64,000 nucleotides of DNA from sequence record NC_016163.1, one strand, 5' to 3'. The notes beneath the pieces were generated by a model, which saw only the letters and a program-made list of their open reading frames with translations, was not told the DNA's origin and searched no databases. A program made the translations under genes and the position numbers. Shown piece by piece: positions 3,093 through 28,129 of the stretch; position 1 is the first letter of the stretch; each line of letters opens with the position of its first letter.

Positions 3093-3133
3093 AAATTTCC
3101 CTTATGTAATTTTACTATAAAAATTTATACTAA

Positions 3134-9796: not shown

Positions 9797-9809
9797 CTAA
9801 AGAACTGTT
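9797..9809 (-). promoter_or_regulatory. late-type promoter AACA-N6-TAG
   Basis: Exact motif upstream of the holin-lysin pair. Confidence 0.7.
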
Positions 9810-9855: not shown

Positions 9856-10128
9856 TTATTCTTTTTTCTTACTGAGTTCCGATTCAACTACTTCTTTAAT
9901 CTCAGATTTCATATTATTTTCAACAATTTCATTAACTCTAGTAGTGAGCAAAGCGTAAGCATTTTCCAATTTTTTGATTAAACGATTAGCATCTTTAACT
10001 TTAATAGAATCACTTTCACCAATAACATCTAGCAATAGTTTTACTTCCATCGCAGTTAATGGAACTGGAACGTCAGCATTTACAATAGCCAATTTGACGG
10101 AATCAGGTAATTTGTCAATATCTGTCAT
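9856..10128 (-). CDS. hypothetical coiled-coil protein
   Basis: 90 aa ORF at end of the tail operon. Confidence 0.7.
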   Translation of the reverse strand: MTDIDKLPDSVKLAIVNADVPVPLTAMEVKLLLDVIGESDSIKVKDANRLIKKLENAYALLTTRVNEIVENNMKSEIKEVVESELSKKKE

Positions 10129-10706
10129 TTAAGGAAATCCTTGTATTTAACTTGTTTGTAAGTATCTAACAATTTGTTTTTGTCATTAGAATTTTGTAAA
10201 ATTTTACTTATTTCTATTTTAGAATCGTTAATCTTACGAAGTAGTTTATTACGTAATTTAAGTATTTCTTTTATATCATTAAATGATAAAATAGTTACAT
10301 TACCGTCTTCATTTTTAATTCTTAATGGCTCAAACTCTTCTGCTCCGAGATAGAAACAACTTTCAAGTAATTGGAATACTGGAGAAGAAATTCTTATTTC
10401 AGTTGCACCATATGAAATTATATGGTTTTTGTTTATATCGTTGATACTTTCTATATGAAAATTAGCAATCTTCTCCTTCAGCTCACTAACATTAATATTT
10501 TCACTAAAATGTACTACTTTAGGATTGCCGAAGTTATCAAACCCCATTTCGTATTCCGGAGACCTAGTGAGCTGTAGACAGAATCTCTTATAATCCCCTT
10601 CACTAATTTCTTTATACGGCTTAGGTACATTAACAGGTACAGGAATTATAGTTTTGTACAAACCTTTACTTTTAAGACTTACAAAGTAGTGATATTTTTG
10701 TTGCAT
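10125..10706 (-). CDS. tail-fibre chaperone-like protein (DUF4376-like)
   Basis: C-terminal I-DEDG-VT-LS--DI-E-LKLR pattern; position downstream of fibre genes. Confidence 0.5.
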   Translation of the reverse strand: MQQKYHYFVSLKSKGLYKTIIPVPVNVPKPYKEISEGDYKRFCLQLTRSPEYEMGFDNFGNPKVVHFSENINVSELKEKIANFHIESINDINKNHIISYGATEIRISSPVFQLLESCFYLGAEEFEPLRIKNEDGNVTILSFNDIKEILKLRNKLLRKINDSKIEISKILQNSNDKNKLLDTYKQVKYKDFLK

Positions 10707-10759
10707 AATTTACCTTAAAAAAGAAAAGCCCTATGGGTTTCCATAGGGCTTAATTTTAA

Positions 10760-11299
10760 TTAAATGGTAATAATGGCTACATCATCCCATCCGGTAGTAT
10801 AATCATATACGACCAAATCTTCAAAAGTAGTTACTTCGTTAATATCTTTAAAATGAGCATACTCTCTATTGAAAGCTCTTTGAATCTGAATTCTTGCGGC
10901 TTGTTGTAAAGCTTTAGCAGTAGAGATATCAAGTTCAATCCACTGAGTATTACTAACTTTCCAAGTCAAAGTATAGTGATTTAAACCACCAGATTCTGAT
11001 TCATAAGAGGAGATTAAATCAGCTAAGCGACTCATATTAGTGTCAGTAGGACTAAAAGAACCTTCTTTAACACCAATAGGGGTAATCTGATAATTATAGC
11101 GATAAGTAGCTAAATTAGCAATTACTTCATTCTTAGCCTGATTAAGAAATTGATTAAAAGTAGCTTCTGCTACCGTAGCAATCTCCTTAGTATCCCAAAT
11201 AGCGCCATCATATGAATCAAACTGAGAAAATACTGGATTACCTTTGCTATTAATAATAGTAAATCCAGATTCCATAATATTAAGCTTTAAGATTTCCAT
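10760..11299 (-). CDS. DUF4376-like tail-fibre associated protein
   Basis: RYNYQ..TWKVSNTQWIELD..ALQQAARIQIQRAFNRE..I motif; directly downstream of Kelch gene. Confidence 0.7.
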   Translation of the reverse strand: MEILKLNIMESGFTIINSKGNPVFSQFDSYDGAIWDTKEIATVAEATFNQFLNQAKNEVIANLATYRYNYQITPIGVKEGSFSPTDTNMSRLADLISSYESESGGLNHYTLTWKVSNTQWIELDISTAKALQQAARIQIQRAFNREYAHFKDINEVTTFEDLVVYDYTTGWDDVAIITI

Positions 11300-11308
11300 C
11301 TTTAACCC

Positions 11309-14300
11309 TTATAAATAATTACGCACAATACCAATTTTGGTAGGGGAATTAAACACTGAAGCTGAGCCAGCTATATATTTATTCATTTCATAGAATTTAC
11401 CATCAACTCCATAATGGAGTAATGATTTAGATGCCGACAGATATGGAGACCAAAGTGCTGCACTAGCTATAGGTACCATATTGGCTGTATCTACTACTCT
11501 AAATTCTTTAGTATCTAAATTAAGAATATTTAATTGCCCGCCTAGGAACTTAGGAGTATAACCAGTATGAATAAATCCAGAAGAACTATCCTTAGAGGTA
11601 TTTAGTTGATTATAGAATAGAATTTCATTCTTCTCACAGTTAGGAATTCTTTCGGCAAAGTGAACCTCACAAAATTCATTCTTACCATTAGTAAGACCAC
11701 GGAAATTTTGAATAAATGAGTACTCTACACTTACATCTTTATAAGTATTTGAAGAAATTGAATACTCATAAATAATTTTATTAGGATTCCCTAAGTCTTG
11801 GCGAAGAGAAGGTAAATCTACTTTATCGTCTACTAGTCCAATATACCCACCAAAGATAATAATCTTATCCTTATCTTTTCTGAAACAATTCCCCCAACCT
11901 ATCCCATAATTTGGTAGGCTAGCTATTAATGAGAAAGTATTGGTGTCTACATCATATACCATACAACGTTGGGTAGATAGGGAATTACTAGCAATATCCC
12001 AATATGGTACTTTTTGAGCTGTATATCCGCCAAACATATACAATTTTCTCGTATCTTTGTCAAAATATGCAGCACCATTACCATATTGATAAGGCATAGT
12101 TGCTATCTGACTTATGGTTTTAGTAGCCATATCAAATTTGTAAACAAACATATTAAATACATTATTTACATTACGACTATCTATATAGGATATACCATTT
12201 TCTGTAAATTGTACTAAAGTCTTATTCTTTACGCCACCAACAATAATAGGATTTCCATCTCTATCAGAACAAGTTGCACCATATACAGAACTTAATTGAG
12301 AACTAGGATAGAAAGTAAATTTCTCCGTCACTCTATTATAGATACCTATAATATTTTGAGGAGTAGTTGTATTATTTGGCGCTCTTGATTGTACAGTAAA
12401 AGTAAAGAATATTGATGTATTATCATATTCATTACATGGTATAACCATAGGTGCCGTATAAATATCAACTAAACTTTCCCAACCTACAACATCATTGTAT
12501 GCTCCAGTAACATCAGTTTTAAATCCAGAAATAATTTTATCTCTATCTGGATGGTCAATCCTTTCAGAAAATTCTCGCTGATACAAGTGCGTGATGTAGA
12601 TTCTTCCATACTTATCTACTGTACAACATTTATCGGAGTCAAGTTTAACTATACCATTTTGTGGATAGAAATTATTTCTACGAGTCAGAGATACAGTAAT
12701 TTTACTGTTAACTAAATCATAATCCCAATGCCTACCAGTGTTATCTACTAAGCGAATAACATCTTTATTCAAATAGCTTGCGCCAACAATATAAGAATTA
12801 GATATAGCTGTAGATAAATCACTTAGAGATTTAGTTGTTACTGTACCAGTATTACTAATAATGGAAAAATTATTATTAGTAGTAGTATCTGGATGTAAAC
12901 CATAAAATACATAAGTATTTCCATTAAATGTATTTTCAGTTATATCGCCAGCAATAAAATCATATGGTAATGTAGTTAAGATTGACCAAGTAGTGCTAGT
13001 CAAATCATATGCATATACATTCCGATTAAATGTTCCATCTGATTTAACCCCACCAATATACAGTACCTTATTATCCGGAGTTACTTTAGCTCTACCATAT
13101 GCCACTGATATTGGTAGAGAGGTTATAGCAGCCCAAGTATCCGAATATGTAATCAGATCATTAGTGAAGAAACTATTTGATAAAACGCCTTCTTTATCAC
13201 CACCTAAAATAAATACTCTACCAGATTTAGAAACAGCCGTAGCTGCACCTTTTAATCCTTTTGTAAGTTTATCTACATTTAAAATAGTTTCAGTACCATA
13301 AGATACACTATATTTAATTAATTTTGAACCATCAATTGGTGTACCGAAATCATTACTCTTACCAGTACTTAAGTAATAGAAATCACCTTTATACTTAAAT
13401 GGTTGGTTGAAAGAAGAATATGTATTATCAGAAATCTCTCTTTCAACTACAATACCTGAGAAGGTGTCACTGGTATCATTATCTGGATAGTAAATAAATC
13501 CAACAGAAGGACGATTTAGATTTACTAATCCTTTAGTATTTAAGTACTCAGGTACTCCAGAAAAACTGTTTCCTCTATCTCCGCCAAAAATTGCTATCCT
13601 ACCATCTTTAAGTGCAGCCATAGCGCAACTGGAACCGGCACTTAAAATGTTCTTATCTATAACCGATGCATTATTTGTAAGGTTTAATGGGGATTTATAT
13701 GTCATGGTACCTTTTGTTAAATCAAAGCATAACATATCTGCTACGTTGACATCCGATTCAAATTGCAATGGGACAGTAGTAGCAGTAGTACCTTCTTTTA
13801 ACTGAGACACCCAACCAGTGGTATACAATTTATCCTTAATTCTTACTATCTGACTGCCATCACCTGCAGCGATAGTATTAATCCATTTAGACCAAGTATT
13901 AGTAGCTACGTCATATACTAAACCATAATTCCATTTACCATAAGCAGAAAATGAATTAGAAGCATTATCCTGTAATGGTAAATAAATTTTACCATTATAA
14001 TAATGTAGATATGTATTTCTCCAAGGATAATTACTACCAGACGAACCAGACGGCATTAATGAGGTAGGAATAGAAGCTAAGACTTCTACTGCTCCTAGAG
14101 TTACGTTGTTCGTATCAGACCCATAAATAATTTTTCTTCTACCAAAATGGTTTATTGCTACATCAGCTCCGTCAGGTGATGTAGTCCCAAATGGAATGTA
14201 TACATATAGATAATCATTTACATCATCATAAGTTACGCCATGACTTCTAAATAAGTAATTACTCCATTGACCAAGAATAACCCATTTTTGACCACCACTT

Positions 14301-15217
14301 ACATTATCACTAGTGTAAAGCAGTATGTCCCCAACAGTTTTCCACCACTGATTATTAGTATTTGCTTGATCACTATAATATGCACCCCCTCCTAATTGTA
14401 AGGCGCAGTTATTTTTTATAGCACAAAGCCTATGATTATTTACTGGATAAGGTAAATTAGAAGTTTCTCTAAAAGTCCTATCCGCTGGATTGAAGATGTA
14501 TGATTTATTGGTAACTACTTTTGTCTGAGAAGTACTATATTCATCCAATACTAATACTGGATTGTAAAACCCTCCAGTTAGTAATACAGTACCATCTGTA
14601 AGAGTAACTGCTTCAGCATCAATCCATCCATTTAAGGGTAAATTGAAACTTTCATAAATTTTCTTAGACCCGTCTGTATATACAGCCCAAGGTTTAATTG
14701 TAGTAAATTGCGTAGGATCAATAATGTATGAAAGGGTTTCTAATGTGTCTTCAGACATTACAGCATCCACAATTACAGGTGCTGCAGCTATGACGTTTGA
14801 TAAAGCTAATGCTAAATATTCTATGCCATTATATACTACTGAAACTAGAGAATTCTGATAATTCTCATTATTTTCCATAGTATACTTTTTAACATACCCA
14901 TTTACTACCTTTAAAGAGATTTTTACTTTATTACTTCCAGCAATACCTAATTTACCATCAATATAGATGTCTTTGTATAGGTTGCCTAGAATAATATATG
15001 AATAAGAGCTATTTTTAATAGAATTACCTAAAAATGTCTTAAGTTTATAGTTACCGCCAAATTTTACAGCTTTACCTTTAAAAATTTGGAAGAAAGATTG
15101 AGTTTTTAAACTAGAGCTAGTAGGCTTACCAGAAGATAAGGTTCCGTCCTGATAATTTAATTTACCATCTATTAGTGCTCTGTTACTAAATCTTGCGGAC
15201 TCTCTAGTCTGTGACAT
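11309..15217 (-). CDS. Kelch-repeat beta-propeller virion protein 3 (1302 aa)
   Basis: Many GG..Y/F..W Kelch units (VLLTGG, IAIFGG, VFILGG, LYIGG, LYMFGG, IIIFGG); N-domain shared with neighbours. Confidence 0.85.
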   Translation of the reverse strand: MSQTRESARFSNRALIDGKLNYQDGTLSSGKPTSSSLKTQSFFQIFKGKAVKFGGNYKLKTFLGNSIKNSSYSYIILGNLYKDIYIDGKLGIAGSNKVKISLKVVNGYVKKYTMENNENYQNSLVSVVYNGIEYLALALSNVIAAAPVIVDAVMSEDTLETLSYIIDPTQFTTIKPWAVYTDGSKKIYESFNLPLNGWIDAEAVTLTDGTVLLTGGFYNPVLVLDEYSTSQTKVVTNKSYIFNPADRTFRETSNLPYPVNNHRLCAIKNNCALQLGGGAYYSDQANTNNQWWKTVGDILLYTSDNVSGGQKWVILGQWSNYLFRSHGVTYDDVNDYLYVYIPFGTTSPDGADVAINHFGRRKIIYGSDTNNVTLGAVEVLASIPTSLMPSGSSGSNYPWRNTYLHYYNGKIYLPLQDNASNSFSAYGKWNYGLVYDVATNTWSKWINTIAAGDGSQIVRIKDKLYTTGWVSQLKEGTTATTVPLQFESDVNVADMLCFDLTKGTMTYKSPLNLTNNASVIDKNILSAGSSCAMAALKDGRIAIFGGDRGNSFSGVPEYLNTKGLVNLNRPSVGFIYYPDNDTSDTFSGIVVEREISDNTYSSFNQPFKYKGDFYYLSTGKSNDFGTPIDGSKLIKYSVSYGTETILNVDKLTKGLKGAATAVSKSGRVFILGGDKEGVLSNSFFTNDLITYSDTWAAITSLPISVAYGRAKVTPDNKVLYIGGVKSDGTFNRNVYAYDLTSTTWSILTTLPYDFIAGDITENTFNGNTYVFYGLHPDTTTNNNFSIISNTGTVTTKSLSDLSTAISNSYIVGASYLNKDVIRLVDNTGRHWDYDLVNSKITVSLTRRNNFYPQNGIVKLDSDKCCTVDKYGRIYITHLYQREFSERIDHPDRDKIISGFKTDVTGAYNDVVGWESLVDIYTAPMVIPCNEYDNTSIFFTFTVQSRAPNNTTTPQNIIGIYNRVTEKFTFYPSSQLSSVYGATCSDRDGNPIIVGGVKNKTLVQFTENGISYIDSRNVNNVFNMFVYKFDMATKTISQIATMPYQYGNGAAYFDKDTRKLYMFGGYTAQKVPYWDIASNSLSTQRCMVYDVDTNTFSLIASLPNYGIGWGNCFRKDKDKIIIFGGYIGLVDDKVDLPSLRQDLGNPNKIIYEYSISSNTYKDVSVEYSFIQNFRGLTNGKNEFCEVHFAERIPNCEKNEILFYNQLNTSKDSSSGFIHTGYTPKFLGGQLNILNLDTKEFRVVDTANMVPIASAALWSPYLSASKSLLHYGVDGKFYEMNKYIAGSASVFNSPTKIGIVRNYL

Positions 15218-15253
15218 AGTAAGATTACCTTTTATTTATCTTATATAAAAGAA

Positions 15254-15266
15254 CTAAAAAGTTGTT
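15254..15266 (-). promoter_or_regulatory. late-type promoter AACA-N6-TAG
   Basis: Exact motif 37 nt upstream of the start codon. Confidence 0.7.
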
Positions 15267-15323
15267 CGTAAATAAAAGTCCCCTAATAAGACATGATGCT
15301 TATTAGGGGGTAACTTTAAATTA

Positions 15324-18300
15324 TTAAGATATTACAACAAACATACCTAATCCGTTTATGTAAACGGATTTATTTAGACGACTACCAAACATTCCTGGAA
15401 GAACAATTATTTTACCTGACTTAAGCTCAAACATTTCTGGATAAGCTGAGTCATCTGAAGAAAAAATACCTGTAGATGTAGAAAGGGCTGTAGTTACAGG
15501 AGCTATCATTTTATTTGCTTCAATAGGTACACTAATAAGCTGCCAAGGAATACCGGTATTATACTTCTTATTATAAGGATTGAAAATACCAGCCGTTATA
15601 GTTGATTTAGTTTCTACCCAAGGGAAAATATAGAAGTTACCATTACTATGTTTAATACCGGTTAAGTTAATATAAGTAGGTCTTACTCTACCAGATTCAA
15701 GTAAAGCTGCTGGTATAACTGATTCACTCTTAGTAAGATCAATAGTTTTAAATAACCCATTGGCATCGGCTTCGTCAGTAGTATTAGTTAATGTATCAAA
15801 AACAGTTACCTGATTATTGAGTATCTTACCAGTATTCCCCATAGCATCAGGTGATAAATTATCTGAACTAAAGCAGAAAAGCGTACCGTTATCAGCAACA
15901 GCCGCATAATTTCGGAAAGGTGAAATTGCCATATCAGGGTTATCAGTAATTGATAATTTACCTAAGTATGTTAAGGTATTGGCTGAAATACTATATTTAA
16001 ATACTTTGTTAAAACAAGTGTTTGCATGATAATCTGTAACAGTACTCCAATATTTATACCCACCAAATATCAAAATCTCATCAGGGTTATTAGTCAAAGA
16101 TATCATAGTGCCATTGATAAATTTAACATTAACACTTAATGGATTATTAATATAAGTTGGCTGCTTCTCAGTATAAGTATTAGTAACTGGATCGAAGATA
16201 GTTAAAGTACTTCTCATGTATTTGATAGGGTTAGTTTGTAAATCAGTAGAAGCGCTACTGAGATCCCATAAACCTCCAATTAAAACAATTCTTCCATCTG
16301 GTAGGGTCTTAGCTACACCATTTGACCAGTTTTGACATAAAGAAGAAGGTATAGTATCTTCTTGCCAAGTACCTAAAGTAAATAAACCATCTGAATTTTC
16401 AGTAACTTTAGCTTTCCAATGACTATTAACGAAAACAGATTCACCAGACTTAGCCCCTCCACTAATTACCCCGCCAAAATAATGTATATTATCATTAGAA
16501 TCTAAAACTTTAGTACTGGCTGTTATAAAAATATCATTTGTTTCAGTACGATTACCTAAAGTAAATACAGGGGAAATCCCAAATGAAGTAAATTTAATTT
16601 TAGGTTTATATGCAGCATTAATGAATTTAAAAGGAGGAGTAACTGAAATTGAACCATTAGATCCTTTAACCATACCAAATGGTATATAAAATTCACCTTT
16701 AGGCGTTTTAACTAGATCGGCTAATGCAAAACATCTAGTTTGCGTAACCATTTCAAATTTATTAGTATCAATATAGTATTTAAATACTAAGGTACCACTA
16801 TAATTTTTAGCTCTACCAGCATACAAAACAATCTCATTTGTGTTGATTTTGGTAGCTCGCATCCACCCTTCTGATTCAAATTCAATAGGAATGGATTGTA
16901 ATTGAGTATAGATAGGGGTTAGATAAGTGTCACCTTTATTTACTAAAGATAGCTTGAAGGTCTCAGATGAATAAACTTTATCGCCATTTTCATCAAAAGT
17001 AGTACCGCCGAATACAATGCATTCAGTATCAGATATAGATACTAAAGCTGAACCATATTTAGCATACTTCTCTAAAGGTATTGAACTGCCGCTACTCTCA
17101 ATTAAATCATGGTAACGAGTGACACTGTTACTTGTAACTGAATAAACTCCATATCCTGAAGATTTATTCAATGACATTTCATCTTTACCACCAATCATAT
17201 AGAATACATTTTGAGTAGAATTATAGAAATAATTGCCATATTCTCTCAATATTCTGTTATTATCATTAGAAGTATAGAAATTGTCTTTGAAATAAGGTTT
17301 GCCAGCAGTCCAAGTTATACCAGAATCTGGAGAATAAAAATAGAATAATGTACTCTTGTTCAGAGTTCTATCACTGGAATCTGCAGCATCTTTAGTGCCA
17401 GCCGTACTACCTAAGAGAACTAACGAATAACCAGTTATACTGTTAAAATTATTAATTTTCTGTAGAGAAAATTCAGATGGATCAGTTGCACTATAAATAG
17501 TATTCGCTTCATCATCGAAATCTATAGCCGCTCCACCTTTCATATTAAGTCTATAATTAACCACTGCTGGAACTGGTGAAACTGTCCAAGTATATTTAAC
17601 TGTATCAAATAAATAGGCAGTTTTATTCTTTTCAAGAATAGTATAAACTTTATTGCTAGATGTACTAGCTGATTGAGTATTATACCAGTTCGCTACAGGG
17701 GTATTTGGTATAGTGCAATTGTCATTTAATGGAATTAATCTAGATAAAACATTTGGGTTAGTTGCTATTACACTCTTATTAAAATCTACAATCATAGCAT
17801 GATTAGAATGCATTAAACCTGTAGATATCTTATTATCAGGATCAGAAAAGAAGAAAGATTCCCCTTCACCATAATTTACACAACCACCAGCAAGAATAAC
17901 TCGTTTATCTTTAAAAATACCTATACCGTTACATACAAAGCCTGGGTATGGTAATTTTTCTCTATAGTAATAATCTTTAGTATTAAAATCTATTTCAATA
18001 ATATCTCTAAATGCAGAAGTATAGTAAGCTCCATTACCAGTTCCGGTAACAGTGGGTATTGTAGTAAATTCCCCACTTACGCCAGTAAACATTATAAGTT
18101 TATTATCATTTATAGGAGAACGAATAATCTTTGGCACCGACAGGAAGAAATCAAAGCTCATAAACTTTGTAATTTCTTCAGTAGCTACATCAAATTTATA
18201 TAAAACTGTACCTTTATGGTTGTTTCTAAAAATACCAGCAGTAAATATTATACCATTTAGCTCCGGTAGATATACAGATGAATTAAATGAATCCTGATCG

Positions 18301-19442
18301 AAGGCAGTAGGATTTGCAACGTTTTCATTAAATACGGCTGTATATTTATTAGCTACATAAGTTTCTTCACCAGTCAATAAATTATATTTATATAACCCAA
18401 AGAAAGGAACCATTGTAGTCGGAACAGAGTTTACATAAGCAGTTTCTCTGCCACAAAAGACATAAATTGTATCATTTACTATACAGGCTGCAGTGGAAAA
18501 GAATTGATGAGATACAGGTATTCTTTCATATGTATCATTTTCTATATCATGTATATAGAAATAACTACCACCGACTACGGGAATCCCTATTGAGCGCACC
18601 CCATAGTTTATGATCATATTTTTACCAGGCTTGTACTCTACAGTACTAGACATATACAAAGCTTCTGGGAAGGGAGCCATTTCTCTCCAACTATTTGTCT
18701 CTGGATTGTATTCGAAAACATTATTGCAACCAGTTTCACTAGAGAATCCTATTTCATTAGGATATGTTAAACCAGTAGCTAATCCATTCTCACCAGCACA
18801 ACCAGGATAAAGATAAAATTTATTATTTTTTGAGTTAACTGTACCGGATACATTTCGCATAGCCATACCAATTTTAGGAATGTCTGGTATGCTACGGAAC
18901 ATAGAATTACTCAAAAAAGTACTTACTGAATATGATTCATATTCAGTAGATTTTAATGTAACTACTTGTGATGAATCAGATACAACAGCTTCCAGTATAT
19001 AGCTTCCTAAAGCATCAAATTTTAAGCCTATATAAGATTTATCACCTTTAGTAACATCTACTAAAGTAATTTTAAATGCTACAGAGAAGAAAGAACCTTC
19101 TTTAATATAGTCATTTGATTTGTTATATGCAAAATCAAATGTAGCTGAATCTGCATAATCATCATTTACAAAGTTAATCTTACCTGAGAATGTAAAGTCT
19201 TTACTTGTTTCAGCAAGTATAAGAATATCGTTTACATCTGAGATAACACCTTGTACTTCAAATTTAAAAGTAGTGGAATTTTTTAGTGCTTCTGCATTAC
19301 TTCCACTAAGTAACACCGATGCGAATTCTTTGGGGTCTATGTCTAGCTCACCTGTATAAATATTACCTTTCTTATCAGCTTTCAGGTTATTGCCAGAGAT
19401 TATTTGTCTACTAAACTTAGTAGATTTTCTGGATAAAGACAT
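15324..19442 (-). CDS. Kelch-repeat beta-propeller virion protein 2 (1372 aa)
   Basis: YNPETNSWREMAPFP, IYVFCG, VILAGG, FYMIGG, IVFGG, HYFGG, VLIGG, LIFGG. Confidence 0.85.
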   Translation of the reverse strand: MSLSRKSTKFSRQIISGNNLKADKKGNIYTGELDIDPKEFASVLLSGSNAEALKNSTTFKFEVQGVISDVNDILILAETSKDFTFSGKINFVNDDYADSATFDFAYNKSNDYIKEGSFFSVAFKITLVDVTKGDKSYIGLKFDALGSYILEAVVSDSSQVVTLKSTEYESYSVSTFLSNSMFRSIPDIPKIGMAMRNVSGTVNSKNNKFYLYPGCAGENGLATGLTYPNEIGFSSETGCNNVFEYNPETNSWREMAPFPEALYMSSTVEYKPGKNMIINYGVRSIGIPVVGGSYFYIHDIENDTYERIPVSHQFFSTAACIVNDTIYVFCGRETAYVNSVPTTMVPFFGLYKYNLLTGEETYVANKYTAVFNENVANPTAFDQDSFNSSVYLPELNGIIFTAGIFRNNHKGTVLYKFDVATEEITKFMSFDFFLSVPKIIRSPINDNKLIMFTGVSGEFTTIPTVTGTGNGAYYTSAFRDIIEIDFNTKDYYYREKLPYPGFVCNGIGIFKDKRVILAGGCVNYGEGESFFFSDPDNKISTGLMHSNHAMIVDFNKSVIATNPNVLSRLIPLNDNCTIPNTPVANWYNTQSASTSSNKVYTILEKNKTAYLFDTVKYTWTVSPVPAVVNYRLNMKGGAAIDFDDEANTIYSATDPSEFSLQKINNFNSITGYSLVLLGSTAGTKDAADSSDRTLNKSTLFYFYSPDSGITWTAGKPYFKDNFYTSNDNNRILREYGNYFYNSTQNVFYMIGGKDEMSLNKSSGYGVYSVTSNSVTRYHDLIESSGSSIPLEKYAKYGSALVSISDTECIVFGGTTFDENGDKVYSSETFKLSLVNKGDTYLTPIYTQLQSIPIEFESEGWMRATKINTNEIVLYAGRAKNYSGTLVFKYYIDTNKFEMVTQTRCFALADLVKTPKGEFYIPFGMVKGSNGSISVTPPFKFINAAYKPKIKFTSFGISPVFTLGNRTETNDIFITASTKVLDSNDNIHYFGGVISGGAKSGESVFVNSHWKAKVTENSDGLFTLGTWQEDTIPSSLCQNWSNGVAKTLPDGRIVLIGGLWDLSSASTDLQTNPIKYMRSTLTIFDPVTNTYTEKQPTYINNPLSVNVKFINGTMISLTNNPDEILIFGGYKYWSTVTDYHANTCFNKVFKYSISANTLTYLGKLSITDNPDMAISPFRNYAAVADNGTLFCFSSDNLSPDAMGNTGKILNNQVTVFDTLTNTTDEADANGLFKTIDLTKSESVIPAALLESGRVRPTYINLTGIKHSNGNFYIFPWVETKSTITAGIFNPYNKKYNTGIPWQLISVPIEANKMIAPVTTALSTSTGIFSSDDSAYPEMFELKSGKIIVLPGMFGSRLNKSVYINGLGMFVVIS

Positions 19443-19470
19443 AATTTGTTTTACCTTTTTATGAAAAGAT

Positions 19471-19483
19471 CTAAATTTTTGTT
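19471..19483 (-). promoter_or_regulatory. late-type promoter AACA-N6-TAG
   Basis: Exact motif upstream of Kelch gene 2. Confidence 0.7.
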
Positions 19484-19529
19484 AAAAAATATTGACCTTA
19501 TACCATTTCTGGTATAAGGTCAATAATTG

Positions 19530-22316
19530 TTAAGGTTTGTAAGTCATAATAATGTTTTTGGCTAAACCATCATTCAGACTTACATATTTGTAAATAACGC
19601 TAAATGCTGATCCGGTAGAATAATTCACAAATCCATAAAGTGCAGCAGTATTCTTTATTAAGTCCATTACAAACTGAGATGGATGAGGGATAACGGTATA
19701 CGAATCATCTACTAAATTGTACTTAATAGCCCGTTCATAGTTAAGGATAAACATCTCATTTGGGTTTGTAGCCGATAAACACCCAGCAGTATATCTGGCG
19801 TCCGGATATAATTTTCCAGTATCAGTCCAAGTATTAGTTAAAATATTATAGTATATCTTCCTATTAGGTTGATCGTTTAAGGTATTAAATACATATATTC
19901 TTTCATTTACATTATCGTAAACAAAAGCAGTGGTACGTATTTTATATGGGCAGTCAGCCATTCTAGTTACAGAATCTGTAGCTGGATTATAACAATAAAG
20001 TCTTTCAGAAGTTGAAGAGTAACCTATACCTTTGGCTTCATTATTACAAAGCCCATAAAAAATTCTTCCATCATTAATTCTTACTGCACTACCATCAGCA
20101 AAAGCAATACCTAGATTTTCTACCGATACATTAGATAATGACCATGTATTAGTAGAAAGATTTAGTTTATAAAAACGAGAAGACATTGTATCGCTCCAGC
20201 TAGTTGGATAATTACTTGGTCTTCCATAACCACCTAACATTATCATTTCATTAGGACTACATGGTACTAGAGGGACTTGACCGCCTGGAAATAACTGATT
20301 GTCGGATAATCTATTTATTCCAGTAGATTTTTTATACGAATACCAACGTTTACTAGAATACATGCAATTATTAGTATAATCGAACCCATAAAACCCTCCA
20401 AACAGTAGATTACCGTTTGCATCTCTTCCCATACATTCACTTATATAATCTATATAGTTTGCAGTTGCAGCAGATGTGTTATCCTTTAAATCCGCTGAAG
20501 AATCATATACGTTCATAATACTGGAGGGGATGATCGCATCTATTTCCCAAACGCCTAAAGTGTTATAGTGATACTTGTTGTCATCATAGAAGAAGAAAGA
20601 CTGACCCGTTATATTTTGAGTAGTTACTTTAGTGGTACTATTATATGATGGAACGATAGAAGGTTGTCCTATCATTAATCTGCCATCATTTAATTTAGTG
20701 GATGGACAAATAGCTAAACTAATTGGTGCAGAAGATAGAGCTGAGAAGGTTTTGGTAGTATGATCATAGATAGTCATAGCTAAGTTTGTATTAGCGTAAT
20801 TGTCCCTATTTAGATAAGAATTAAAGTTAACACCTGGTTTATATCCACCGATTATAGCCACTCTATTATCAGATAACTTCTCTAATACAGGTACAGTACA
20901 TTGTAATGGATTTCCAGTTACAGGAGTGAATAGATATGAATTCATATCCCAAATATAGTTTTTAGGGTTATTGTATAGATCTCCGCCATTGAATGCACAC
21001 GAATCAAATGCATGAACAAAGAAAAGATTGTCTACAAGATGTACTACTCTCATATCAAAATTACTAAATACCGTGTCTGATCTAGGAATAAAGTAATTAG
21101 CAGTATCTTTACCAGCCTTAGTCCATTTCTTAGTTTCGGTATTATAAATAAATGGATATCTATAGTATGGTCTATATGTGTTGACATCAATTGATGTATT
21201 AAGTGCAGAGTTATAGCCCAACACCCCACCCATAATTACAATATTTTTTCCATCCGGATGGATAGCTAGACCATACTTATCCCATCCACTTACTGTAGGC
21301 GATTTAGTTTCTATAGACCATAATTCAGTTTTAGGGGAATATCGATAAACGTATTTAGGGTAAGGCCTTAACTCATTTAGTATAGCTGGCGTAAGGTTCT
21401 GATTGGGAATAGTGGCTCCCGCAATAACACTATAACCGAAGAATACCAGTACATCACCATCTGCCAACGTGACACATTTTGAGTTATTAATCGGGAACCA
21501 AGGAAATCTAGCAGTTTTTCTCATTTCTCCAGTGTATGGGTTGATGATCCATGCATTATTCCAAGTTTTTAAAGTTCCGCCTCCCAAGCCACTAGCACCG
21601 TTAGAGTTGTTCCCTGCAGTACTATTAGCCGCTGGCGAATCCATTTCTAAGAAGAATACATTACCATCTTTTAAAGTAGTCATGTTAGTCATGCCTGGAG
21701 CGACATGTAACATGTTCATTTCCACAGTATCCCATTTAGAATTACTAATATTATTTTTATAAATTACTGATTTACTTCCAATGAAATCAGAAGTCGTAAT
21801 AGTTATATCAGTAGTTTCTATAGAAACTGAAATAAATCCAGAGAAATATACTTCTGCATCCACAGTGGTTTCAATCTGAATAGCCACCCAAGTTTTACTT
21901 TGATAAGTAACGAACATTACCGTATCATTACTGGAAGCATTTTCTAAATTAGCTCTTGCAATAGAGCTAACGCCTATATTTGCACAAGTGCTAAAAGTCC
22001 TAATTTTATTAGTATTATCTTTAATAATAAAATCGCCATCAATTACAAAAACACCTGAATCTACAGGAGTTAATAGAATATAATGGAAACCATTTCTAGC
22101 AGTCATTGAGATAGTTTTACCAATAAACTTATTATTAAATTCATAAGTATTACTTGCAATGGTAGCAGTACCTCCGGCAGAGATAAAGTCAGCTACCATT
22201 TTATCATTTGTGTATTCGGCATTATTAGAAGCTAATAAATTATTATCCACTTTAGTTAAAGCGTCATATTTTACTATTCTACCAACGTTCTTAGCTATCT
22301 GTCTTGTCTTAGACAT
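19530..22316 (-). CDS. Kelch-repeat beta-propeller virion protein 1 (928 aa)
   Basis: LADGDVLVFFG, YSPKTELWS, IVIMGG, YNTETKKWT, VAIIGG, LLFGG, MIMLGG. Confidence 0.85.
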   Translation of the reverse strand: MSKTRQIAKNVGRIVKYDALTKVDNNLLASNNAEYTNDKMVADFISAGGTATIASNTYEFNNKFIGKTISMTARNGFHYILLTPVDSGVFVIDGDFIIKDNTNKIRTFSTCANIGVSSIARANLENASSNDTVMFVTYQSKTWVAIQIETTVDAEVYFSGFISVSIETTDITITTSDFIGSKSVIYKNNISNSKWDTVEMNMLHVAPGMTNMTTLKDGNVFFLEMDSPAANSTAGNNSNGASGLGGGTLKTWNNAWIINPYTGEMRKTARFPWFPINNSKCVTLADGDVLVFFGYSVIAGATIPNQNLTPAILNELRPYPKYVYRYSPKTELWSIETKSPTVSGWDKYGLAIHPDGKNIVIMGGVLGYNSALNTSIDVNTYRPYYRYPFIYNTETKKWTKAGKDTANYFIPRSDTVFSNFDMRVVHLVDNLFFVHAFDSCAFNGGDLYNNPKNYIWDMNSYLFTPVTGNPLQCTVPVLEKLSDNRVAIIGGYKPGVNFNSYLNRDNYANTNLAMTIYDHTTKTFSALSSAPISLAICPSTKLNDGRLMIGQPSIVPSYNSTTKVTTQNITGQSFFFYDDNKYHYNTLGVWEIDAIIPSSIMNVYDSSADLKDNTSAATANYIDYISECMGRDANGNLLFGGFYGFDYTNNCMYSSKRWYSYKKSTGINRLSDNQLFPGGQVPLVPCSPNEMIMLGGYGRPSNYPTSWSDTMSSRFYKLNLSTNTWSLSNVSVENLGIAFADGSAVRINDGRIFYGLCNNEAKGIGYSSTSERLYCYNPATDSVTRMADCPYKIRTTAFVYDNVNERIYVFNTLNDQPNRKIYYNILTNTWTDTGKLYPDARYTAGCLSATNPNEMFILNYERAIKYNLVDDSYTVIPHPSQFVMDLIKNTAALYGFVNYSTGSAFSVIYKYVSLNDGLAKNIIMTYKP

Positions 22317-22356
22317 AGATAAATCCTTCGTATTAGATTTTCTTTATATAAATATA

Positions 22357-22369
22357 CTAAGAAATTGTT
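22357..22369 (-). promoter_or_regulatory. late-type promoter AACA-N6-TAG
   Basis: Exact motif upstream of Kelch gene 1. Confidence 0.7.
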
Positions 22370-22408
22370 AAAGAACCCCTATAACTTTCATAAGTTATAG
22401 GGGTCTTA

Positions 22409-23095
22409 TTAGTTATCACCAAACATTGAAACAGGTTTTTCAGGCCATACAATTGTAGAAGGATCTACAGTAGAGATTTTATAAACTGCAATACGATATT
22501 TCTTCCATTCAGCCAATTTAGCTTCAACAGCTTCAATATCATCAGCCATTTCAAAGTCAAGCATATCTTGATAAATATTGATATGCTCAAGGGCTTCAGA
22601 CATCAGAGTCTGTTTAGTTTTGTTAGCTGCATCGATAGATGCTTGTAGTTTCTTGTTTTCATTGACTACCCACTTAGCACCATCCCACTCATCAAATTCT
22701 GAAGTAGGGGCTAAAAGAGTAAATCCAGTAGGAATATCACCGAAAGAAGTAACCACTTTAGGGGTTTTATCAGTGGTATTATAGATAGTATAGCCTCTAT
22801 AATCAATTACAATCTGCCAACCTTTATAGTCTACTGCACGCAGAATAGCTTGAGGTACACCTGCAGCTACTTTCTGTTTATATTCAGCAAACGGAGGTAA
22901 ATCCCGATAAGCATAAGCCGCTACAGTAACACCTACAGGTACATACTCACGGTTACTACCAATATATTCTCTGGTAGTAGAGTGAATATTATAAGTACCC
23001 ACATAACCTTCTTTAATACAAAAACCATTACCATCGAAAACAGCTTTGGTCATAGAATCAGGAATGGTTACTTCTTGAAAAATATCAGTTGCCAT
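22409..23095 (-). CDS. tail fibre assembly chaperone (Tfa / Caudo_TAP-like)
   Basis: WQIVIDYRG..FDEWDGAKWV..LAEWKKYRI..WPEKP, lambda Tfa/TfaE-like. Confidence 0.9.
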   Translation of the reverse strand: MATDIFQEVTIPDSMTKAVFDGNGFCIKEGYVGTYNIHSTTREYIGSNREYVPVGVTVAAYAYRDLPPFAEYKQKVAAGVPQAILRAVDYKGWQIVIDYRGYTIYNTTDKTPKVVTSFGDIPTGFTLLAPTSEFDEWDGAKWVVNENKKLQASIDAANKTKQTLMSEALEHINIYQDMLDFEMADDIEAVEAKLAEWKKYRIAVYKISTVDPSTIVWPEKPVSMFGDN

Positions 23096-23107
23096 TAAGC
23101 TTCTCCT

Positions 23108-25222
23108 TTATTTGGCCCTAATAATATAGTTAAATGCAATATTTCGTGGTCTATTTTCATTAGCTGTTGGTACACCACTCTTAGATGCATCAAATGTGAA
23201 ACCTGAAACTCCCCCACCAGCTCCACCACCCCCACCAGAGGAATGTGAAAATCCTGTTCTAATAATATCTAATGCACCTTCATTTGCCCATTTAAATAAA
23301 TCCGCTGTCGAAAATGGTTCATCTGAAGAAGAAAGAACGTTTAATTTACCAGTAATATTTCGAATAGCATCCCCCTGATTGGTCAAAATATTTCGTCCAG
23401 TATCTACATTTCTACCATCGTCCCAACCACGGATAAATTCTCCACGAAGATCAGGTAGGACTCCAGATGGGTAATAGTTTAATAATTTAGGGAAAGCTAC
23501 CTGATCAAAAGCACTACCATTAGCTTTCAAAAAGTTTTTAGGTGGAGTTGCTAATGGATAAGGAATTGGTACGCCTATAGGAAGTAAGAGATTATTTGAG
23601 AAATCTGTATCAGAAAATATTGTAACCCATCCGCTACTAGTGCCATCAGCTCTTAAACAGATAGCAAATACTTGACCTGAAAAATCAACGGCTATTGCAG
23701 ATTTAGAATTTGACCCACCATGATCCATTAAAAGAATATCAGAATATTGTCCAGAAGGTATTCCATTTGTATATGATGAAGAATCACCAAATCTATACAT
23801 ACCGGAAGGAGCATTTTTTAAAAAAGCAATTAAGTCTTTACCCTCACCAGAAAAAGGTACTCCTGAGCCACCCAAACCAAACGCTCCAACTTGCATCAAA
23901 CTGCCTGAAGTGGTATCGGTAATGTTAGTTTGAGCAGTTTTCTGAGCAGCACTACCTAATTCAAGATTAGTACGAGCTATTGATTTATCTGTAAGATCTT
24001 TTAAGTTTTTATCTTTCTGAGCAGCACCAGTAATGCGGCTATCGTCACCTGCAGCAACTGTACCTGTTTCCGTACCAACATTTTTGGTAGCTGAATCACC
24101 TAAACCTAGATTAGTTCTAGCTTTGGCTTTATCTTTAATATCAGATAAATTATTTTCAGTACCTAATGCTTTTAATTCATTAAGAGTAGGTAAGTTATTT
24201 GCCAGATATACCTTGGATAACTCAACTCCGTCAGCGCCATCAATACCTAAAGATAATACGCCATCAGAAGATAAAACTAAATACCCTGTAAGAGTTTTAG
24301 ATATAGGGAAAGATAGAACCCCATAATCTTTATCTACTTCAGGTTTATCCGGAGAGTCATCAGTTAATTGGTAGAAAGCGGGTATTACTGATTTAAGCGC
24401 AGCAACTTTATTATCATTTATACCTAAACCACCATCACCTACAACAATTACATTACCTTTAGCAGTACCTTTATTTAATACAGATGCTGTTCCAAGACCT
24501 AGATTTAACCTAGCAATTTCCTTATCATCGTCATCTACAATTTCTGAGAAAAGATTTGAGATTTGGAAGAAGGTATCTTTAGCCGTTTCTTTTGAATATA
24601 CATTCAAATCATTTAAGTTAGGTTTATGTTTATCCGTATAAATACTTTCTACAGCAAAAGTTCTAGAAGATGTTCCATAAGAACATCTTAAAACATATGA
24701 AGCTTTTTCATTAGCTAAGTCTGATACAAAGGCAATAAAACCACCTTTACTGGAAGTACCTGTAGCCATTACATTAATAACTACATTAACGCCTAAGTCT
24801 AGGCCAACCGGAATATTGGTTGCGGCAGCTTTTGCTAATACAATAACTTCATTAGATTTAAATTTATAAGTATTGAAGTCTAACGCTGAAATAATAGTAG
24901 ATTCTTCTAAGAAACTATTAAAATCACCTACAGAATATAACTGTCCTTTATCTGTACCCGATTCTTTAAGAGCTGCACTCTTAATTCCTAGATTTTCTCT
25001 AGCTTTTGCTTTATCTGAAATTTCTTCCAAATTACCTTCAATAGTTAAGAAAGTACTTGCTGCTTCAGATGGAGAAATTACAGTTCCATCCCCTTGCTTA
25101 TAAAATATAGCCTTTTTATCACCAACTAAGAATAATTCTCCCGGATAAATTCCGGTAATTTCTTCAGAGTTTAAGTTAGGTATAGTTCTAAGAACAAAGG
25201 CTATCCTACTTAAGTTTGCCAT
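23108..25222 (-). CDS. tail fibre protein with phage tail collar domain
   Basis: PIGVPIPYP..FLKANG..LPDLRGEFIRGWDDGRNVD collar motif; five NL-D/E---K--AR-NL repeats. Confidence 0.9.
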   Translation of the reverse strand: MANLSRIAFVLRTIPNLNSEEITGIYPGELFLVGDKKAIFYKQGDGTVISPSEAASTFLTIEGNLEEISDKAKARENLGIKSAALKESGTDKGQLYSVGDFNSFLEESTIISALDFNTYKFKSNEVIVLAKAAATNIPVGLDLGVNVVINVMATGTSSKGGFIAFVSDLANEKASYVLRCSYGTSSRTFAVESIYTDKHKPNLNDLNVYSKETAKDTFFQISNLFSEIVDDDDKEIARLNLGLGTASVLNKGTAKGNVIVVGDGGLGINDNKVAALKSVIPAFYQLTDDSPDKPEVDKDYGVLSFPISKTLTGYLVLSSDGVLSLGIDGADGVELSKVYLANNLPTLNELKALGTENNLSDIKDKAKARTNLGLGDSATKNVGTETGTVAAGDDSRITGAAQKDKNLKDLTDKSIARTNLELGSAAQKTAQTNITDTTSGSLMQVGAFGLGGSGVPFSGEGKDLIAFLKNAPSGMYRFGDSSSYTNGIPSGQYSDILLMDHGGSNSKSAIAVDFSGQVFAICLRADGTSSGWVTIFSDTDFSNNLLLPIGVPIPYPLATPPKNFLKANGSAFDQVAFPKLLNYYPSGVLPDLRGEFIRGWDDGRNVDTGRNILTNQGDAIRNITGKLNVLSSSDEPFSTADLFKWANEGALDIIRTGFSHSSGGGGGAGGGVSGFTFDASKSGVPTANENRPRNIAFNYIIRAK

Positions 25223-25268: not shown

Positions 25269-25281
25269 CTATTAAAGTGTT
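25269..25281 (-). promoter_or_regulatory. late-type promoter AACA-N6-TAG
   Basis: Exact motif upstream of fibre gene. Confidence 0.7.
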
Positions 25282-28116: not shown

Positions 28117-28129
28117 CTAAATTTTTGTT
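28117..28129 (-). promoter_or_regulatory. late-type promoter AACA-N6-TAG
   Basis: Exact motif upstream of fibre gene. Confidence 0.7.

What the first reader, a model, noticed from the sequence alone, without database searches (positions are those of the whole stretch)
10125..22369. Three large Kelch beta-propeller proteins arranged like tail fibres, each with its own late promoter and a shared N-terminal anchor
Seen: three tandem genes (928, 1372, 1302 aa) built mostly of GG..Y..W Kelch units. Their starts are similar (MSKTRQIA / MSLSRKST / MSQTRESA). Their ~180-aa N-domains align by eye (YILLT..IDGDF..VTYQSKTWVAI; ILILA..FSGKI..VTKGDKSYIGL; YIILG..IDGKL..VVYNGIEYLAL). Each has an exact AACA-N6-TAG promoter and an upstream hairpin, lies next to two bona fide tail fibres, and the set is followed by DUF4376-like chaperones. 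Known: Kelch propellers bind glycans or proteins and are atypical for phage receptor-binding proteins, which are usually trimeric beta-helices or prisms. Inference: a family of multi-propeller virion adhesins sharing one docking module, possibly binding capsule, mucin or LPS.
Basis: partly seen in the sequence, partly recalled or inferred. Interest (0 to 1): 0.8.

Follow-up and report, generated by a model that had tools for sequence, protein, structure and literature searches.

The report
Three Kelch-propeller tail-module proteins, phage φR1-37
Three neighbouring genes of the giant Yersinia phage φR1-37 encode large proteins made of two or three Kelch beta-propellers behind a lineage-specific N-terminal domain; they look like accessory, exchangeable host-binding parts of the tail, but their Kelch nature was already published and their function is untested.

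Summary
The window is Yersinia phage φR1-37 (AJ972879.2, 100% identity). The three genes are g296, g295 and g294 (928, 1372 and 1302 aa, minus strand). All three pass Pfam Kelch thresholds.

They sit downstream of the experimentally shown receptor-binding pair Gp298/Gp297 and the second fibre g300/g299.

- **N-domain.** g294 and g296 are clear colinear paralogues from residue 1 (hhalign E 5e-16; N-domain alone E 3e-6). For g295, N-domain homology is only marginal.
- **Distribution.** The N-domain is an orphan. In 1.84 billion representative proteins it occurs only at the N-terminus of this family.
- **Evolution.** In relatives the Kelch genes are the fastest-diverging genes of the module (34-38% identity against 60-100%). 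In g294 the propeller region is a recombination cassette starting at the N-domain boundary (pS 0.6 against 0.2).
- **Signals.** AACA-N6-TAG is a real, positionally enriched and conserved element. The hairpins are terminators of the preceding genes, and RNA-seq calls these genes constitutive, not late.
- **Downstream genes.** Only g293 is DUF4376; g292 is not.
- **Prior knowledge.** The Kelch annotation and the g294 "tail fibre / structural protein" label are already published.

Best reading: accessory virion adhesins, analogous to ΦKZ gp298. Moderate interest.

The parts
19530..22316 (-). g296, 928 aa: N-domain plus two Kelch propellers
   Evidence: ORF. GenBank g296. Kelch_6 47.5 bits. The AF2 strand pattern fits about 6+6 blades. 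Foldseek finds tandem-propeller proteins and the KEAP1 Kelch domain.
15324..19442 (-). g295, 1372 aa: divergent N-domain plus about three Kelch propellers
   Evidence: ORF. Kelch_6 41.7 bits. All three ~400-aa segments hit Kelch families. The propeller count is inferred from length.
11309..15217 (-). g294, 1302 aa: N-domain plus about three Kelch propellers; annotated 'putative tail fibre protein, phage structural protein'
   Evidence: Colinear with g296 over residues 1-871 (hhalign E 5e-16).
14663..15217 (-). N-domain of g294 (residues 1-185): N-terminal helix plus a beta-sandwich of about 9 strands
   Evidence: AF2 pTM 0.63; the core (residues 50-165) has pLDDT 63-84. No Pfam or PHROG family. 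94-99% identical in relative L002 while the propellers are 61-78%.
21762..22316 (-). N-domain of g296 (residues 1-185), homologous to that of g294
   Evidence: Smith-Waterman z 5.6. hhalign probability 88%, E 3e-6, residues 1-184 aligned to 1-176.
18888..19442 (-). N-terminal region of g295 (residues 1-185), possibly the same module
   Evidence: Shares the M-S-x-[ST]-R start. hhalign P 0.009 local and 0.0012 global, against 0.1-0.46 for controls. The BFVD model of Gp295 is rank 5 (E 1e-3) for the g294 N-domain model. HMMER is not significant.
11768..14617 (-). Propeller cassette of g294 (residues ~201-1150) that is mosaic between relatives
   Evidence: Against the L002 orthologue, synonymous divergence pS is 0.53-0.64 here. 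It is 0.19-0.23 in residues 1-200, 0.23-0.30 after residue 1150, 0.19 in g293 and 0.15 in g292.
22357..22369 (-). AACA-N6-TAG promoter-like element before g296
   Evidence: Conserved in L004 and L006.
19471..19483 (-). AACA-N6-TAG promoter-like element before g295
   Evidence: AACA and TAG are kept in L004 and L007 although the rest of the spacer has diverged.
15254..15266 (-). AACA-N6-TAG promoter-like element before g294
22375..22404 (-). Intrinsic terminator after g297
   Evidence: dG -20.5 kcal/mol, z -5.8. Annotated as a terminator in GenBank.
19490..19525 (-). Intrinsic terminator after g296
   Evidence: 16-bp stem plus T-run. dG -23.5 kcal/mol, z -8.3. The stem sequence changes but pairing is kept in relatives.
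15280..15309 (-). Intrinsic terminator after g295
   Evidence: dG -17.8 kcal/mol, z -5.2.
10760..11299 (-). g293, DUF4376 (Tfa-type chaperone domain), co-transcribed with g294
   Evidence: PF14301 at 39.4 bits. PHROG tail families. 10-nt gap after g294 with no terminator. 92% identical in L002.
10726..10751 (-). Intrinsic terminator after g293
   Evidence: dG -18.8 kcal/mol, z -5.0.
10125..10706 (-). g292, 193 aa, unknown; conserved neighbour but not DUF4376
   Evidence: No Pfam or PHROG family. No similarity to g293, g297 or g299. 97% identical in L002.
22409..25222 (-). Neighbouring fibre g298 and its chaperone g297 (the published receptor-binding complex)
   Evidence: Collar and Caudo_TAP domains. 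PMC13030884.
25360..28078 (-). Neighbouring fibre g300 and its chaperone-like g299
   Evidence: Gp53-like_C; phrog_188 tail fibre assembly.

Best explanation
Gp294, Gp295 and Gp296 are accessory, virion-attached host-surface binding proteins of the φR1-37 tail. Each is a string of two (Gp296) or about three (Gp294, Gp295) Kelch beta-propellers. The string is carried on a lineage-specific N-terminal module of about 180 residues: a short helix followed by a beta-sandwich.

The inferred mechanism is that the N-module docks the protein to a conserved tail or baseplate partner. The propellers then present exchangeable ligand-binding faces that bind surface glycans or proteins of particular Yersinia strains. 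This would supplement the main fibre Gp298/Gp297, which binds the LPS outer core.

Each gene is its own transcription unit: terminator, then the AACA-N6-TAG element, then the Shine-Dalgarno sequence and start codon. g294 is co-transcribed with a Tfa-type DUF4376 protein, g293.

Shown here: the domain make-up, the paralogy of g294 and g296, the restricted distribution, the fast divergence, the cassette exchange, and the conserved signals. Taken from the literature: virion presence of Gp294 (and Gp295). Inferred: docking, ligand binding, oligomeric state and the role of g293.
For: - **Kelch content.** Kelch families pass threshold in all three proteins and in every propeller-sized segment. Foldseek matches the g296 model to tandem-propeller proteins and to the six-bladed KEAP1 Kelch domain (TM 0.60-0.66).
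- **Paralogy.** g296 is colinear with residues 1-871 of g294 (E 5e-16). The N-domains are homologous (E 3e-6).
- **Distribution.** The N-domain is found only at residues 1-~180 of this family among 1.84 billion representative proteins.
- **Conserved synteny.** Gene order is kept in uncultured relatives L002-L007.
- **Divergence.** In the distant relatives g296 is 38% and g295 34-37% identical. Their neighbours are g297 83-85%, g298 60-61%, g300 72-75% and g301-g305 83-100%.
- **Cassette exchange.** In g294 against L002, pS is 0.19-0.23 in the N-domain, 0.53-0.64 in residues 201-1150, and 0.15-0.19 in g293 and g292. dN/dS is 0.02-0.25 throughout.
- **N-to-C gradient.** Identity of g296 to its distant homologues falls from 40-48% to 23-29% along the protein.
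- **Chaperone.** g293 is DUF4376. This domain is found in tail-fibre chaperones (PMC7882524, PMC10579305).
- **Virion presence.** The GenBank note for g294 reads 'phage structural protein'. Table S2 of PMC4848604 lists g294 and g295 as virion structural proteins.
- **Room for further binders.** The phage infects serotypes said to carry different receptors (PMC13030884, PMC4848604).
- **Precedent.** ΦKZ gp298 is a Kelch, NanM-like, low-abundance virion protein needed for adsorption to some wild hosts (PMC12676376).
Against: - No binding data exist for these proteins.
- The outer-core receptor is accounted for by Gp298/Gp297, and blocking with that complex lowers infectivity.
- Gp296 is not recorded as a virion protein, and Gp295 carries no structural note in GenBank.
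- No fibre-type domain occurs in these proteins, and there is no evidence of trimerisation.
- A Tfa-type chaperone acting on an all-propeller protein would be unusual.
- The g295 N-domain homology is marginal.
- The N-domain has no significant match in solved structures (best E 0.085). Its matches to tail proteins in BFVD are weak (E 8e-5 to 1e-3, TM 0.37-0.47) and come from a model with mean pLDDT 59.5.
- dN/dS gives no sign of positive selection.
- There is no detectable sequence homology to ΦKZ gp298.
Confidence: 0.5

Rival explanations
1. They are structural or decorative tail or baseplate components, such as peripheral baseplate proteins or whiskers, with no receptor specificity. Their fast divergence would then reflect weak constraint on exposed surfaces.
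For: - The virion note for g294.
- Their position among tail genes.
- The Kelch protein CBB_552 is a virion component of phage CBB with no assigned role.
- dN/dS of 0.02-0.25 shows no positive selection.
- Gp298/Gp297 already explains outer-core binding.
Against: - The threefold jump in synonymous divergence exactly at the N-domain/propeller junction indicates cassette exchange, which is typical of specificity modules.
- All three paralogue groups are kept in every relative seen.
- dN/dS well below 1 argues against mere relaxation of constraint.
Confidence: 0.25
2. They are glycan-modifying or glycan-processing enzymes carried on the virion, for example NanM-like mutarotase or galactose-oxidase-like Kelch enzymes, which act on host surface sugars rather than simply binding them.
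For: - Sub-threshold NANM (PF24996) hits: g294 at 25.7 bits and g295 at 15.8 bits, and in segments.
- Foldseek lists galactose-oxidase homologues for the g296 model.
- ΦKZ gp298 shows the same weak NanM-like hit.
Against: - All NANM scores are far below the cut-off of 45 bits.
- The matches cover single blades, as expected for any Kelch repeat.
- No catalytic residues or cofactor sites were identified.
- The galactose-oxidase matches have TM of only 0.14-0.23.
Confidence: 0.1
3. They are not surface adhesins. Instead they are Kelch-type protein-protein interaction scaffolds that act inside the infected cell, made early or ejected with the DNA, and that bind host proteins.
For: - Transcripts are present from 2-5 min, and the genes are classed as not differentially expressed.
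- Eukaryotic Kelch domains are mostly protein-binding adaptors (KEAP1 hits).
- Gp296 is listed as 'diverse', not structural.
Against: - Most φR1-37 structural genes are also classed as constitutive, so timing does not discriminate.
- The genes are embedded between fibres, chaperones and a DUF4376 gene.
- g294 carries a structural-protein note.
- Cassette exchange behind a conserved N-domain is the pattern of virion attachment proteins.
Confidence: 0.1

Closest known systems
ΦKZ gp298 (PHIKZ298), a Kelch-domain virion protein needed for adsorption to some wild P. aeruginosa strains (bioRxiv 10.1101/2025.11.23.690004)
   Same: - Both come from jumbo myoviruses.
- Both have Kelch propellers with the same weak Pfam hits (NANM, Kelch_6, Kelch_KLHDC2).
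- Both are annotated as virion proteins.
- gp298 acts as an accessory rather than primary adsorption factor, which is the role proposed here.
   Different: - gp298 is a single propeller of 335 aa with no N-terminal module.
- Its gene lies away from the tail genes.
- No sequence homology is detectable (BLASTP E 0.86; hhalign P 0.1).
- The φR1-37 proteins have 2-3 propellers, form three paralogues, and sit inside the fibre module.
Kelch-like proteins CBB_550, CBB_552 and CBB_554 of jumbo phage vB_PcaM_CBB (PMC5259590)
   Same: - Several Kelch-type propeller genes are clustered in a jumbo phage.
- One of them (CBB_552) was found in the virion by mass spectrometry.
- That paper already cites φR1-37 as another phage with Kelch-like proteins.
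   Different: - tblastn with g294 finds no match in 50,697 phage records other than φR1-37 itself.
- The function of the CBB proteins is also unknown.
Modular tail fibres with a conserved N-terminal anchor, an exchangeable distal part and a downstream Tfa chaperone (Mu S/U, P2 H/G, T4 gp37/gp38; here g298/g297 and g300/g299)
   Same: - The N-domain is conserved and the distal part exchanged, with the recombination breakpoint at the domain junction.
- A DUF4376 chaperone-type gene is co-transcribed downstream of g294.
- The genes lie in the same cluster.
   Different: - No fibre domains such as Collar, Gp53-like_C or beta-helix are present.
- The body is made of globular propellers.
- The N-domain is unrelated to the N-terminus shared by g298 and g300.
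- g295 and g296 have no chaperone gene of their own.
- Trimerisation is unknown.
Six-bladed Kelch propellers such as the KEAP1 Kelch domain, and tandem-propeller sensors such as BT4663 (PDB 4a2m)
   Same: Fold-level match of the g296 model: KEAP1 TM 0.60-0.66 normalised to the target; BT4663 E 1.6e-12.
   Different: - Sequence identity is only 11-16%.
- The model is of low confidence (mean pLDDT 47.8).
- There are no BTB/BACK or sensor domains.
- The biological context is unrelated.
Beta-propeller parts of other phage adsorption organs: ΦKZ gp131 (propeller at the baseplate periphery) and the staphylococcal phage φ11 receptor-binding protein platform. Both are recalled from memory and were not tested.
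   Same: A beta-propeller is used as an exposed tail or baseplate domain.
   Different: - Neither appeared among the 50 best PDB matches of the g296 model.
- Those propellers are not of the Kelch type, as far as I recall.

Membership tests
Kelch-repeat beta-propeller proteins | Kelch motif profiles matched above the curated threshold | tested here: met
   Kelch_6 scores 47.5, 41.7 and 60.5 bits against a cut-off of 25.3. Kelch_4 and Kelch_1 are also above cut-off. Every segment hits Kelch families.
Kelch-repeat beta-propeller proteins | Four-stranded blades closing into six- or seven-bladed propellers | tested here: inconclusive
   The AF2 model of g296 has mean pLDDT 47.8, with blade strands at 70-83. 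Its strand pattern fits about 6+6 blades. Foldseek gives TM 0.60-0.66 to the KEAP1 Kelch domain. The counts for g294 and g295 are inferred from length only.
Trimeric phage tail fibres / receptor-binding proteins | Fibre-type domains (Collar, Gp53-like C, beta-helix, fibrous repeats) | tested here: not met
   None in Gp294-296. They are present in g298 and g300.
Trimeric phage tail fibres / receptor-binding proteins | Conserved N-terminal attachment part with a variable or exchangeable distal part | tested here: met
   For g294, N-domain identity is 94-99% against 61-78% in the propellers, and pS jumps from 0.2 to 0.6 at about residue 200. g296 shows a gradient from 40-48% to 23-29%. g295 is uniform.
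Trimeric phage tail fibres / receptor-binding proteins | Component of the virion | not tested
   Known only from records: the GenBank note for g294, and Table S2 of PMC4848604 for g294 and g295. There is none for g296. The primary proteome paper (J Virol 2012) was not available.
Trimeric phage tail fibres / receptor-binding proteins | Binds a host surface receptor; trimeric | not testable with these tools
   No binding data exist, and only monomer prediction was available.
ΦKZ gp298-type Kelch adsorption factor | Sequence homology to gp298 | tested here: not met
   BLASTP E 0.86 and hhalign P 0.1. The only shared feature is the same weak Pfam Kelch/NANM hits.
Tfa-type tail fibre chaperones (DUF4376), for g293 and g292 | DUF4376 domain above threshold, with the gene directly downstream of its fibre gene | tested here: met
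   This holds for g293: PF14301 at 39.4 bits against 25, and a 10-nt gap after g294 with no terminator. It does not hold for g292, which has no family hit and no similarity to g293, g297 or g299.
Sigma-70 type promoters | -35 and -10 hexamers at 16-18 nt spacing | tested here: not met
   The scan calls no such site at the g294, g295 or g296 elements. It calls one only at g300 (9 of 12 matches). The total number of sites in the region is at chance level.
Annotated φR1-37 (PHIRE) promoters | A/T-rich ATATATTAT...TGA-type consensus | tested here: not met
   The 16 annotated promoters of the window share that consensus and none contains AACA-N6-TAG. No promoter is annotated before g294-g296.
Intrinsic (rho-independent) terminators | GC-containing stem-loop followed by a T-run, located after a gene | tested here: met
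   The stems are kept through sequence change in relatives. They are annotated in GenBank.

The most novel reading that the evidence does not exclude
Gp294-296 would define a new architectural class of phage receptor-binding protein. It would consist of non-fibrous 'beads-on-a-string' Kelch propellers on an orphan N-terminal docking domain. Whole propeller cassettes would be swapped between phages behind the fixed anchor, giving φR1-37 its multi-receptor host range. The module would be driven by a so far unannotated promoter class (AACA-N6-TAG) that it shares with some late genes.
Probability: 0.3. Interest if true: 0.65.

Novelty: new variant of a known kind. Interest (0 to 1): 0.42.

Why it matters
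φR1-37 is a well-studied jumbo phage that infects several Yersinia serotypes said to carry different receptors. Only one receptor-binding complex, Gp298/Gp297, has been identified.

If the three Kelch proteins are accessory adhesins, they would explain part of that host range. Together with ΦKZ gp298, they would also establish Kelch propellers as a recurrent adsorption device of jumbo phages, built differently from trimeric fibres and spikes.

Two further results are useful whatever the function. The cassette boundary at the N-domain/propeller junction gives a concrete, testable model of modular exchange. The AACA-N6-TAG element is a candidate promoter class for genes where RNA-seq found no conserved signal.

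The Kelch nature of the genes and the structural label of g294 are not new.

Tried and rejected
- **Shallow profile comparison.** Comparing N-domains with only the close orthologues (Neff 1) was uninformative. It was repeated with the distant homologues.
- **Blade counting.** An iterative blade HMM found only 5-9 of the expected 12-20 blades per protein, because the blades are too divergent. It was not used for counting.
- **Full-length structure.** The AF2 model of g296 is of low confidence (mean pLDDT 47.8). It was used only for the strand pattern and the fold class. Its N-domain part was not used.
- **Solved structures, by sequence.** g294 gives only a weak Kelch hit (2woz, E 7e-4) and the g296 profile gives none.
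- **N-domain in libraries.** It has no match in Pfam or PHROGs at E up to 1. Against PDB folds it gives only generic beta-sandwich noise.
- **Other phages.** tblastn of g294 against 50,697 phage records finds φR1-37 only.
- **A stray hit.** P0011 (2649 aa; FecR and other families; E 5.7e-4) from the N-domain profile search was judged an unrelated repeat protein.
- **Sigma-70 reading of the motif.** Rejected.
- **'Late' label.** Rejected for these genes on published RNA-seq.
- **ΦKZ gp298.** Rejected as a homologue.
- **Missing source.** The primary proteome paper (PMC3497697) is not held. The mass-spectrometry evidence is therefore second-hand.
- **Not done.** A genome-wide survey of the motif outside the window was not run.

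Full report
**Identity.** The window matches Yersinia phage φR1-37 (AJ972879.2 / NC_016163) at 100% identity; record coordinate = window + 198391. The three ORFs lie on the minus strand:
- g296: 19530-22316, 928 aa
- g295: 15324-19442, 1372 aa
- g294: 11309-15217, 1302 aa

GenBank annotates g294 as 'putative tail fibre protein; phage structural protein'. It gives g295 and g296 no product. Upstream lie g300/g299 and g298/g297, each a fibre plus its assembly protein. Downstream lie g293 and g292.

**What is already known.**
- Table S2 of Leskinen et al. [quoted passage not shown] It groups g294 and g295 as virion structural proteins and g296 as 'diverse'. It classes all three as not differentially expressed, with about 4400, 3100 and 5600 reads in early, middle and late phases.
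- The phage CBB paper (PMC5259590) cites Skurnik et al. 2012 for Kelch-like proteins in the Yersinia giant phage.
- Skurnik et al. 2026 (PMC13030884) show that Gp298/Gp297 is the receptor-binding complex for the LPS outer core. That paper does not mention Gp294-296.
- I could not read the 2012 proteome paper.

**Kelch content.** All three proteins pass the Pfam Kelch thresholds. I cut them into eight propeller-sized pieces, and every piece hits Kelch families.

An AF2 model of g296 built from three sequences is poor overall (mean pLDDT 47.8). Its blade strands reach 70-83. The strand pattern fits about six blades in residues 210-577 and six in 624-908.

Foldseek matches this model to tandem-propeller proteins (BT4663, E 1.6e-12). 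It also matches the six-bladed KEAP1 Kelch domain with TM 0.60-0.66.

So g296 is an N-domain plus two propellers. For g294 and g295, three propellers is an inference from length and from the segment hits.

**The N-terminal module.**
- All three products begin M-S-x-[ST]-R. No other ORF of at least 50 aa in the window does so: 3 of 136.
- g296 and g294 are colinear paralogues. The full-length profile comparison gives probability 98.6% and E 5e-16, aligning residues 1-912 to 1-871. The N-domains alone give E 3e-6. Smith-Waterman gives z 5.6, with 0 of 1000 shuffles as good.
- For g295 the evidence is weak:
  - z is 3.55 against g294 and 0.7 against g296.
  - HMMER does no better than shuffles.
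  - hhalign gives P 0.009 (local, residues 1-157 aligned to 1-157) and 0.0012 (global), against 0.1-0.46 for controls.
- An AF2 model of the g294 N-domain (pTM 0.63; core pLDDT 63-84) shows an N-terminal helix and a beta-sandwich of about nine strands.
- Against BFVD, that model finds itself first. It finds the predicted structure of Gp295 at rank 5 (E 1e-3). It also finds some tail-related proteins weakly, such as a YomR-like protein at 7.7e-5.
- Against PDB nothing is significant.
- No Pfam or PHROG family matches the N-domain.
- A profile of the three N-domains, searched against 1.84 billion representative proteins, finds seven real hits. All are 930-1370 aa, all carry the domain at residues 1-~180, and all have Kelch repeats after it.
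- The module is unrelated to the N-terminus that g298 and g300 share with each other (z 12.7).

**Relatives and evolution.** Uncultured relatives keep the same gene order. The family splits into three orthologue groups, so the triplication is old and all three copies are retained.

In the distant relatives the Kelch genes are by far the most divergent genes of the module:

| Gene | Identity to φR1-37 |
|---|---|
| g296 | 38% |
| g295 | 34-37% |
| g298 | 60-61% |
| g300 | 72-75% |
| g297 | 83-85% |
| g301-g305 | 83-100% |

In the close relative L002, g294 is 79% identical overall, but unevenly. The N-domain is 94-99% identical, the middle 61-78%, and residues 1101-1200 are 95%.

Synonymous divergence (pS) makes the reason plain:

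| Region | pS against L002 |
|---|---|
| g294 residues 1-200 | 0.19-0.23 |
| g294 residues 201-1150 | 0.53-0.64 |
| g294 residues 1151-1300 | 0.23-0.30 |
| g293 | 0.19 |
| g292 | 0.15 |

The propeller region is therefore a cassette of different ancestry. Its left breakpoint falls at the N-domain/propeller junction. dN/dS is 0.02-0.25 everywhere, which indicates purifying selection.

**Signals.** The hairpins are strong (dG -17.8 to -23.5 kcal/mol; z -5.2 to -8.3). Each is followed by a T-run. They are the terminators of g297, g296 and g295, as GenBank annotates.

AACA-N6-TAG occurs 14 times in the window, which is the chance number. However, 11 of the 14 hits lie 20-60 nt upstream of an annotated start codon on the same strand. 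The binomial P is 4e-15, and the composition-corrected expectation is 0.41.

- On the minus strand the element precedes g281, g290, g291, g294, g295, g296, g298, g300 and g302.
- On the plus strand it precedes g311, g313 and g328, which are classed as late.
- AACA and TAG are kept before the g295-like genes of L004 and L007, although the hairpin and spacer have changed.
- The element is neither a sigma-70 match nor the annotated promoter type.

It is therefore a plausible promoter-like element, but its function is inferred. The transcription units appear to be [g300 g299] [g298 g297] [g296] [g295] [g294 g293] [g292 g291].

**Downstream genes.** g293 is DUF4376. This domain is found in tail-fibre chaperones such as TfaMu and Alteromonas phage V22 gp27. 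g292 has no family and no similarity to the chaperones.

**Mechanism.** The best reading is accessory virion adhesins. In this reading a conserved N-module docks the protein to the tail, and exchangeable Kelch propellers bind host surface structures.

The closest functional precedent is ΦKZ gp298. It is a Kelch, NanM-like, low-abundance virion protein needed for adsorption to some wild hosts. I fetched it. It shows the same weak Pfam hits but no detectable homology.

The rivals are:
- purely structural or decorative parts;
- virion-borne glycan enzymes (only sub-threshold NANM hits support this);
- intracellular protein binders.

None is excluded, and no binding evidence exists.

**Verdict.** Much of it is already in the literature: the Kelch nature, the structural label and the tail-fibre annotation.

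New here:
- the g294/g296 paralogy from residue 1;
- the orphan, lineage-restricted N-module;
- the cassette exchange at its boundary;
- the extreme divergence of the Kelch genes relative to their neighbours;
- the positional and evolutionary support for the AACA-N6-TAG element.

Noticed in passing
window 24668-25222 and 27524-28078 (minus strand): The first 185 residues of the two true fibres, g298 and g300, are clearly similar to each other (Smith-Waterman z 12.7). They are not similar to the Kelch N-domains. The phage therefore seems to have two separate classes of N-terminal attachment module.
   Followed up: partly
window 3130-3142, 9797-9809, 10166-10178, 25269-25281, 28117-28129, 29200-29212 (minus strand); 35183-35195, 36848-36860, 45280-45292 (plus strand): AACA-N6-TAG also lies 18-46 nt before the starts of g281, g290, g291, g298, g300, g302, g311, g313 and g328. 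The last three are classed as late and lie within the split topoisomerase/gyrase region that carries homing endonucleases. None of these sites is annotated as a promoter in the record.
   Followed up: partly
window 18988-19162 (plus strand) and 18923-18949: A published antisense RNA (misc_9, record 217379-217553) lies inside g295. A 12-bp palindromic hairpin, read as terminator-like on both strands, lies about 40 nt before it.
   Followed up: no
L003:10001-13000: The g294 orthologue of the 97%-identical relative is itself mosaic. Its pS is 0.19-0.46 in the first 500 codons and 0.015-0.06 in codons 501-1000.
   Followed up: partly
window 4020-5302 and 5349-6215: In relative L003 the orthologue of g284 carries a HicB-like antitoxin family hit. 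The orthologue of the structural protein g285 carries a weak Phage_base_V (baseplate spike) hit.
   Followed up: no
window 55057 (plus strand): The annotated start of g337 (DnaB-like helicase part) reads CTG at the coordinate I derived from the record. It is the only one of 90 annotated starts that is not ATG, GTG or TTG. This may be a coordinate slip or a non-standard start in a split gene.
   Followed up: no
window 25360-25881 and 28828-29157: Published read counts per nucleotide are 4-6 times lower for g299 and g302 than for their neighbours g298, g300 and g301 (computed from Table S2). Transcript levels along this 'operon-like' block are therefore not uniform.
   Followed up: no
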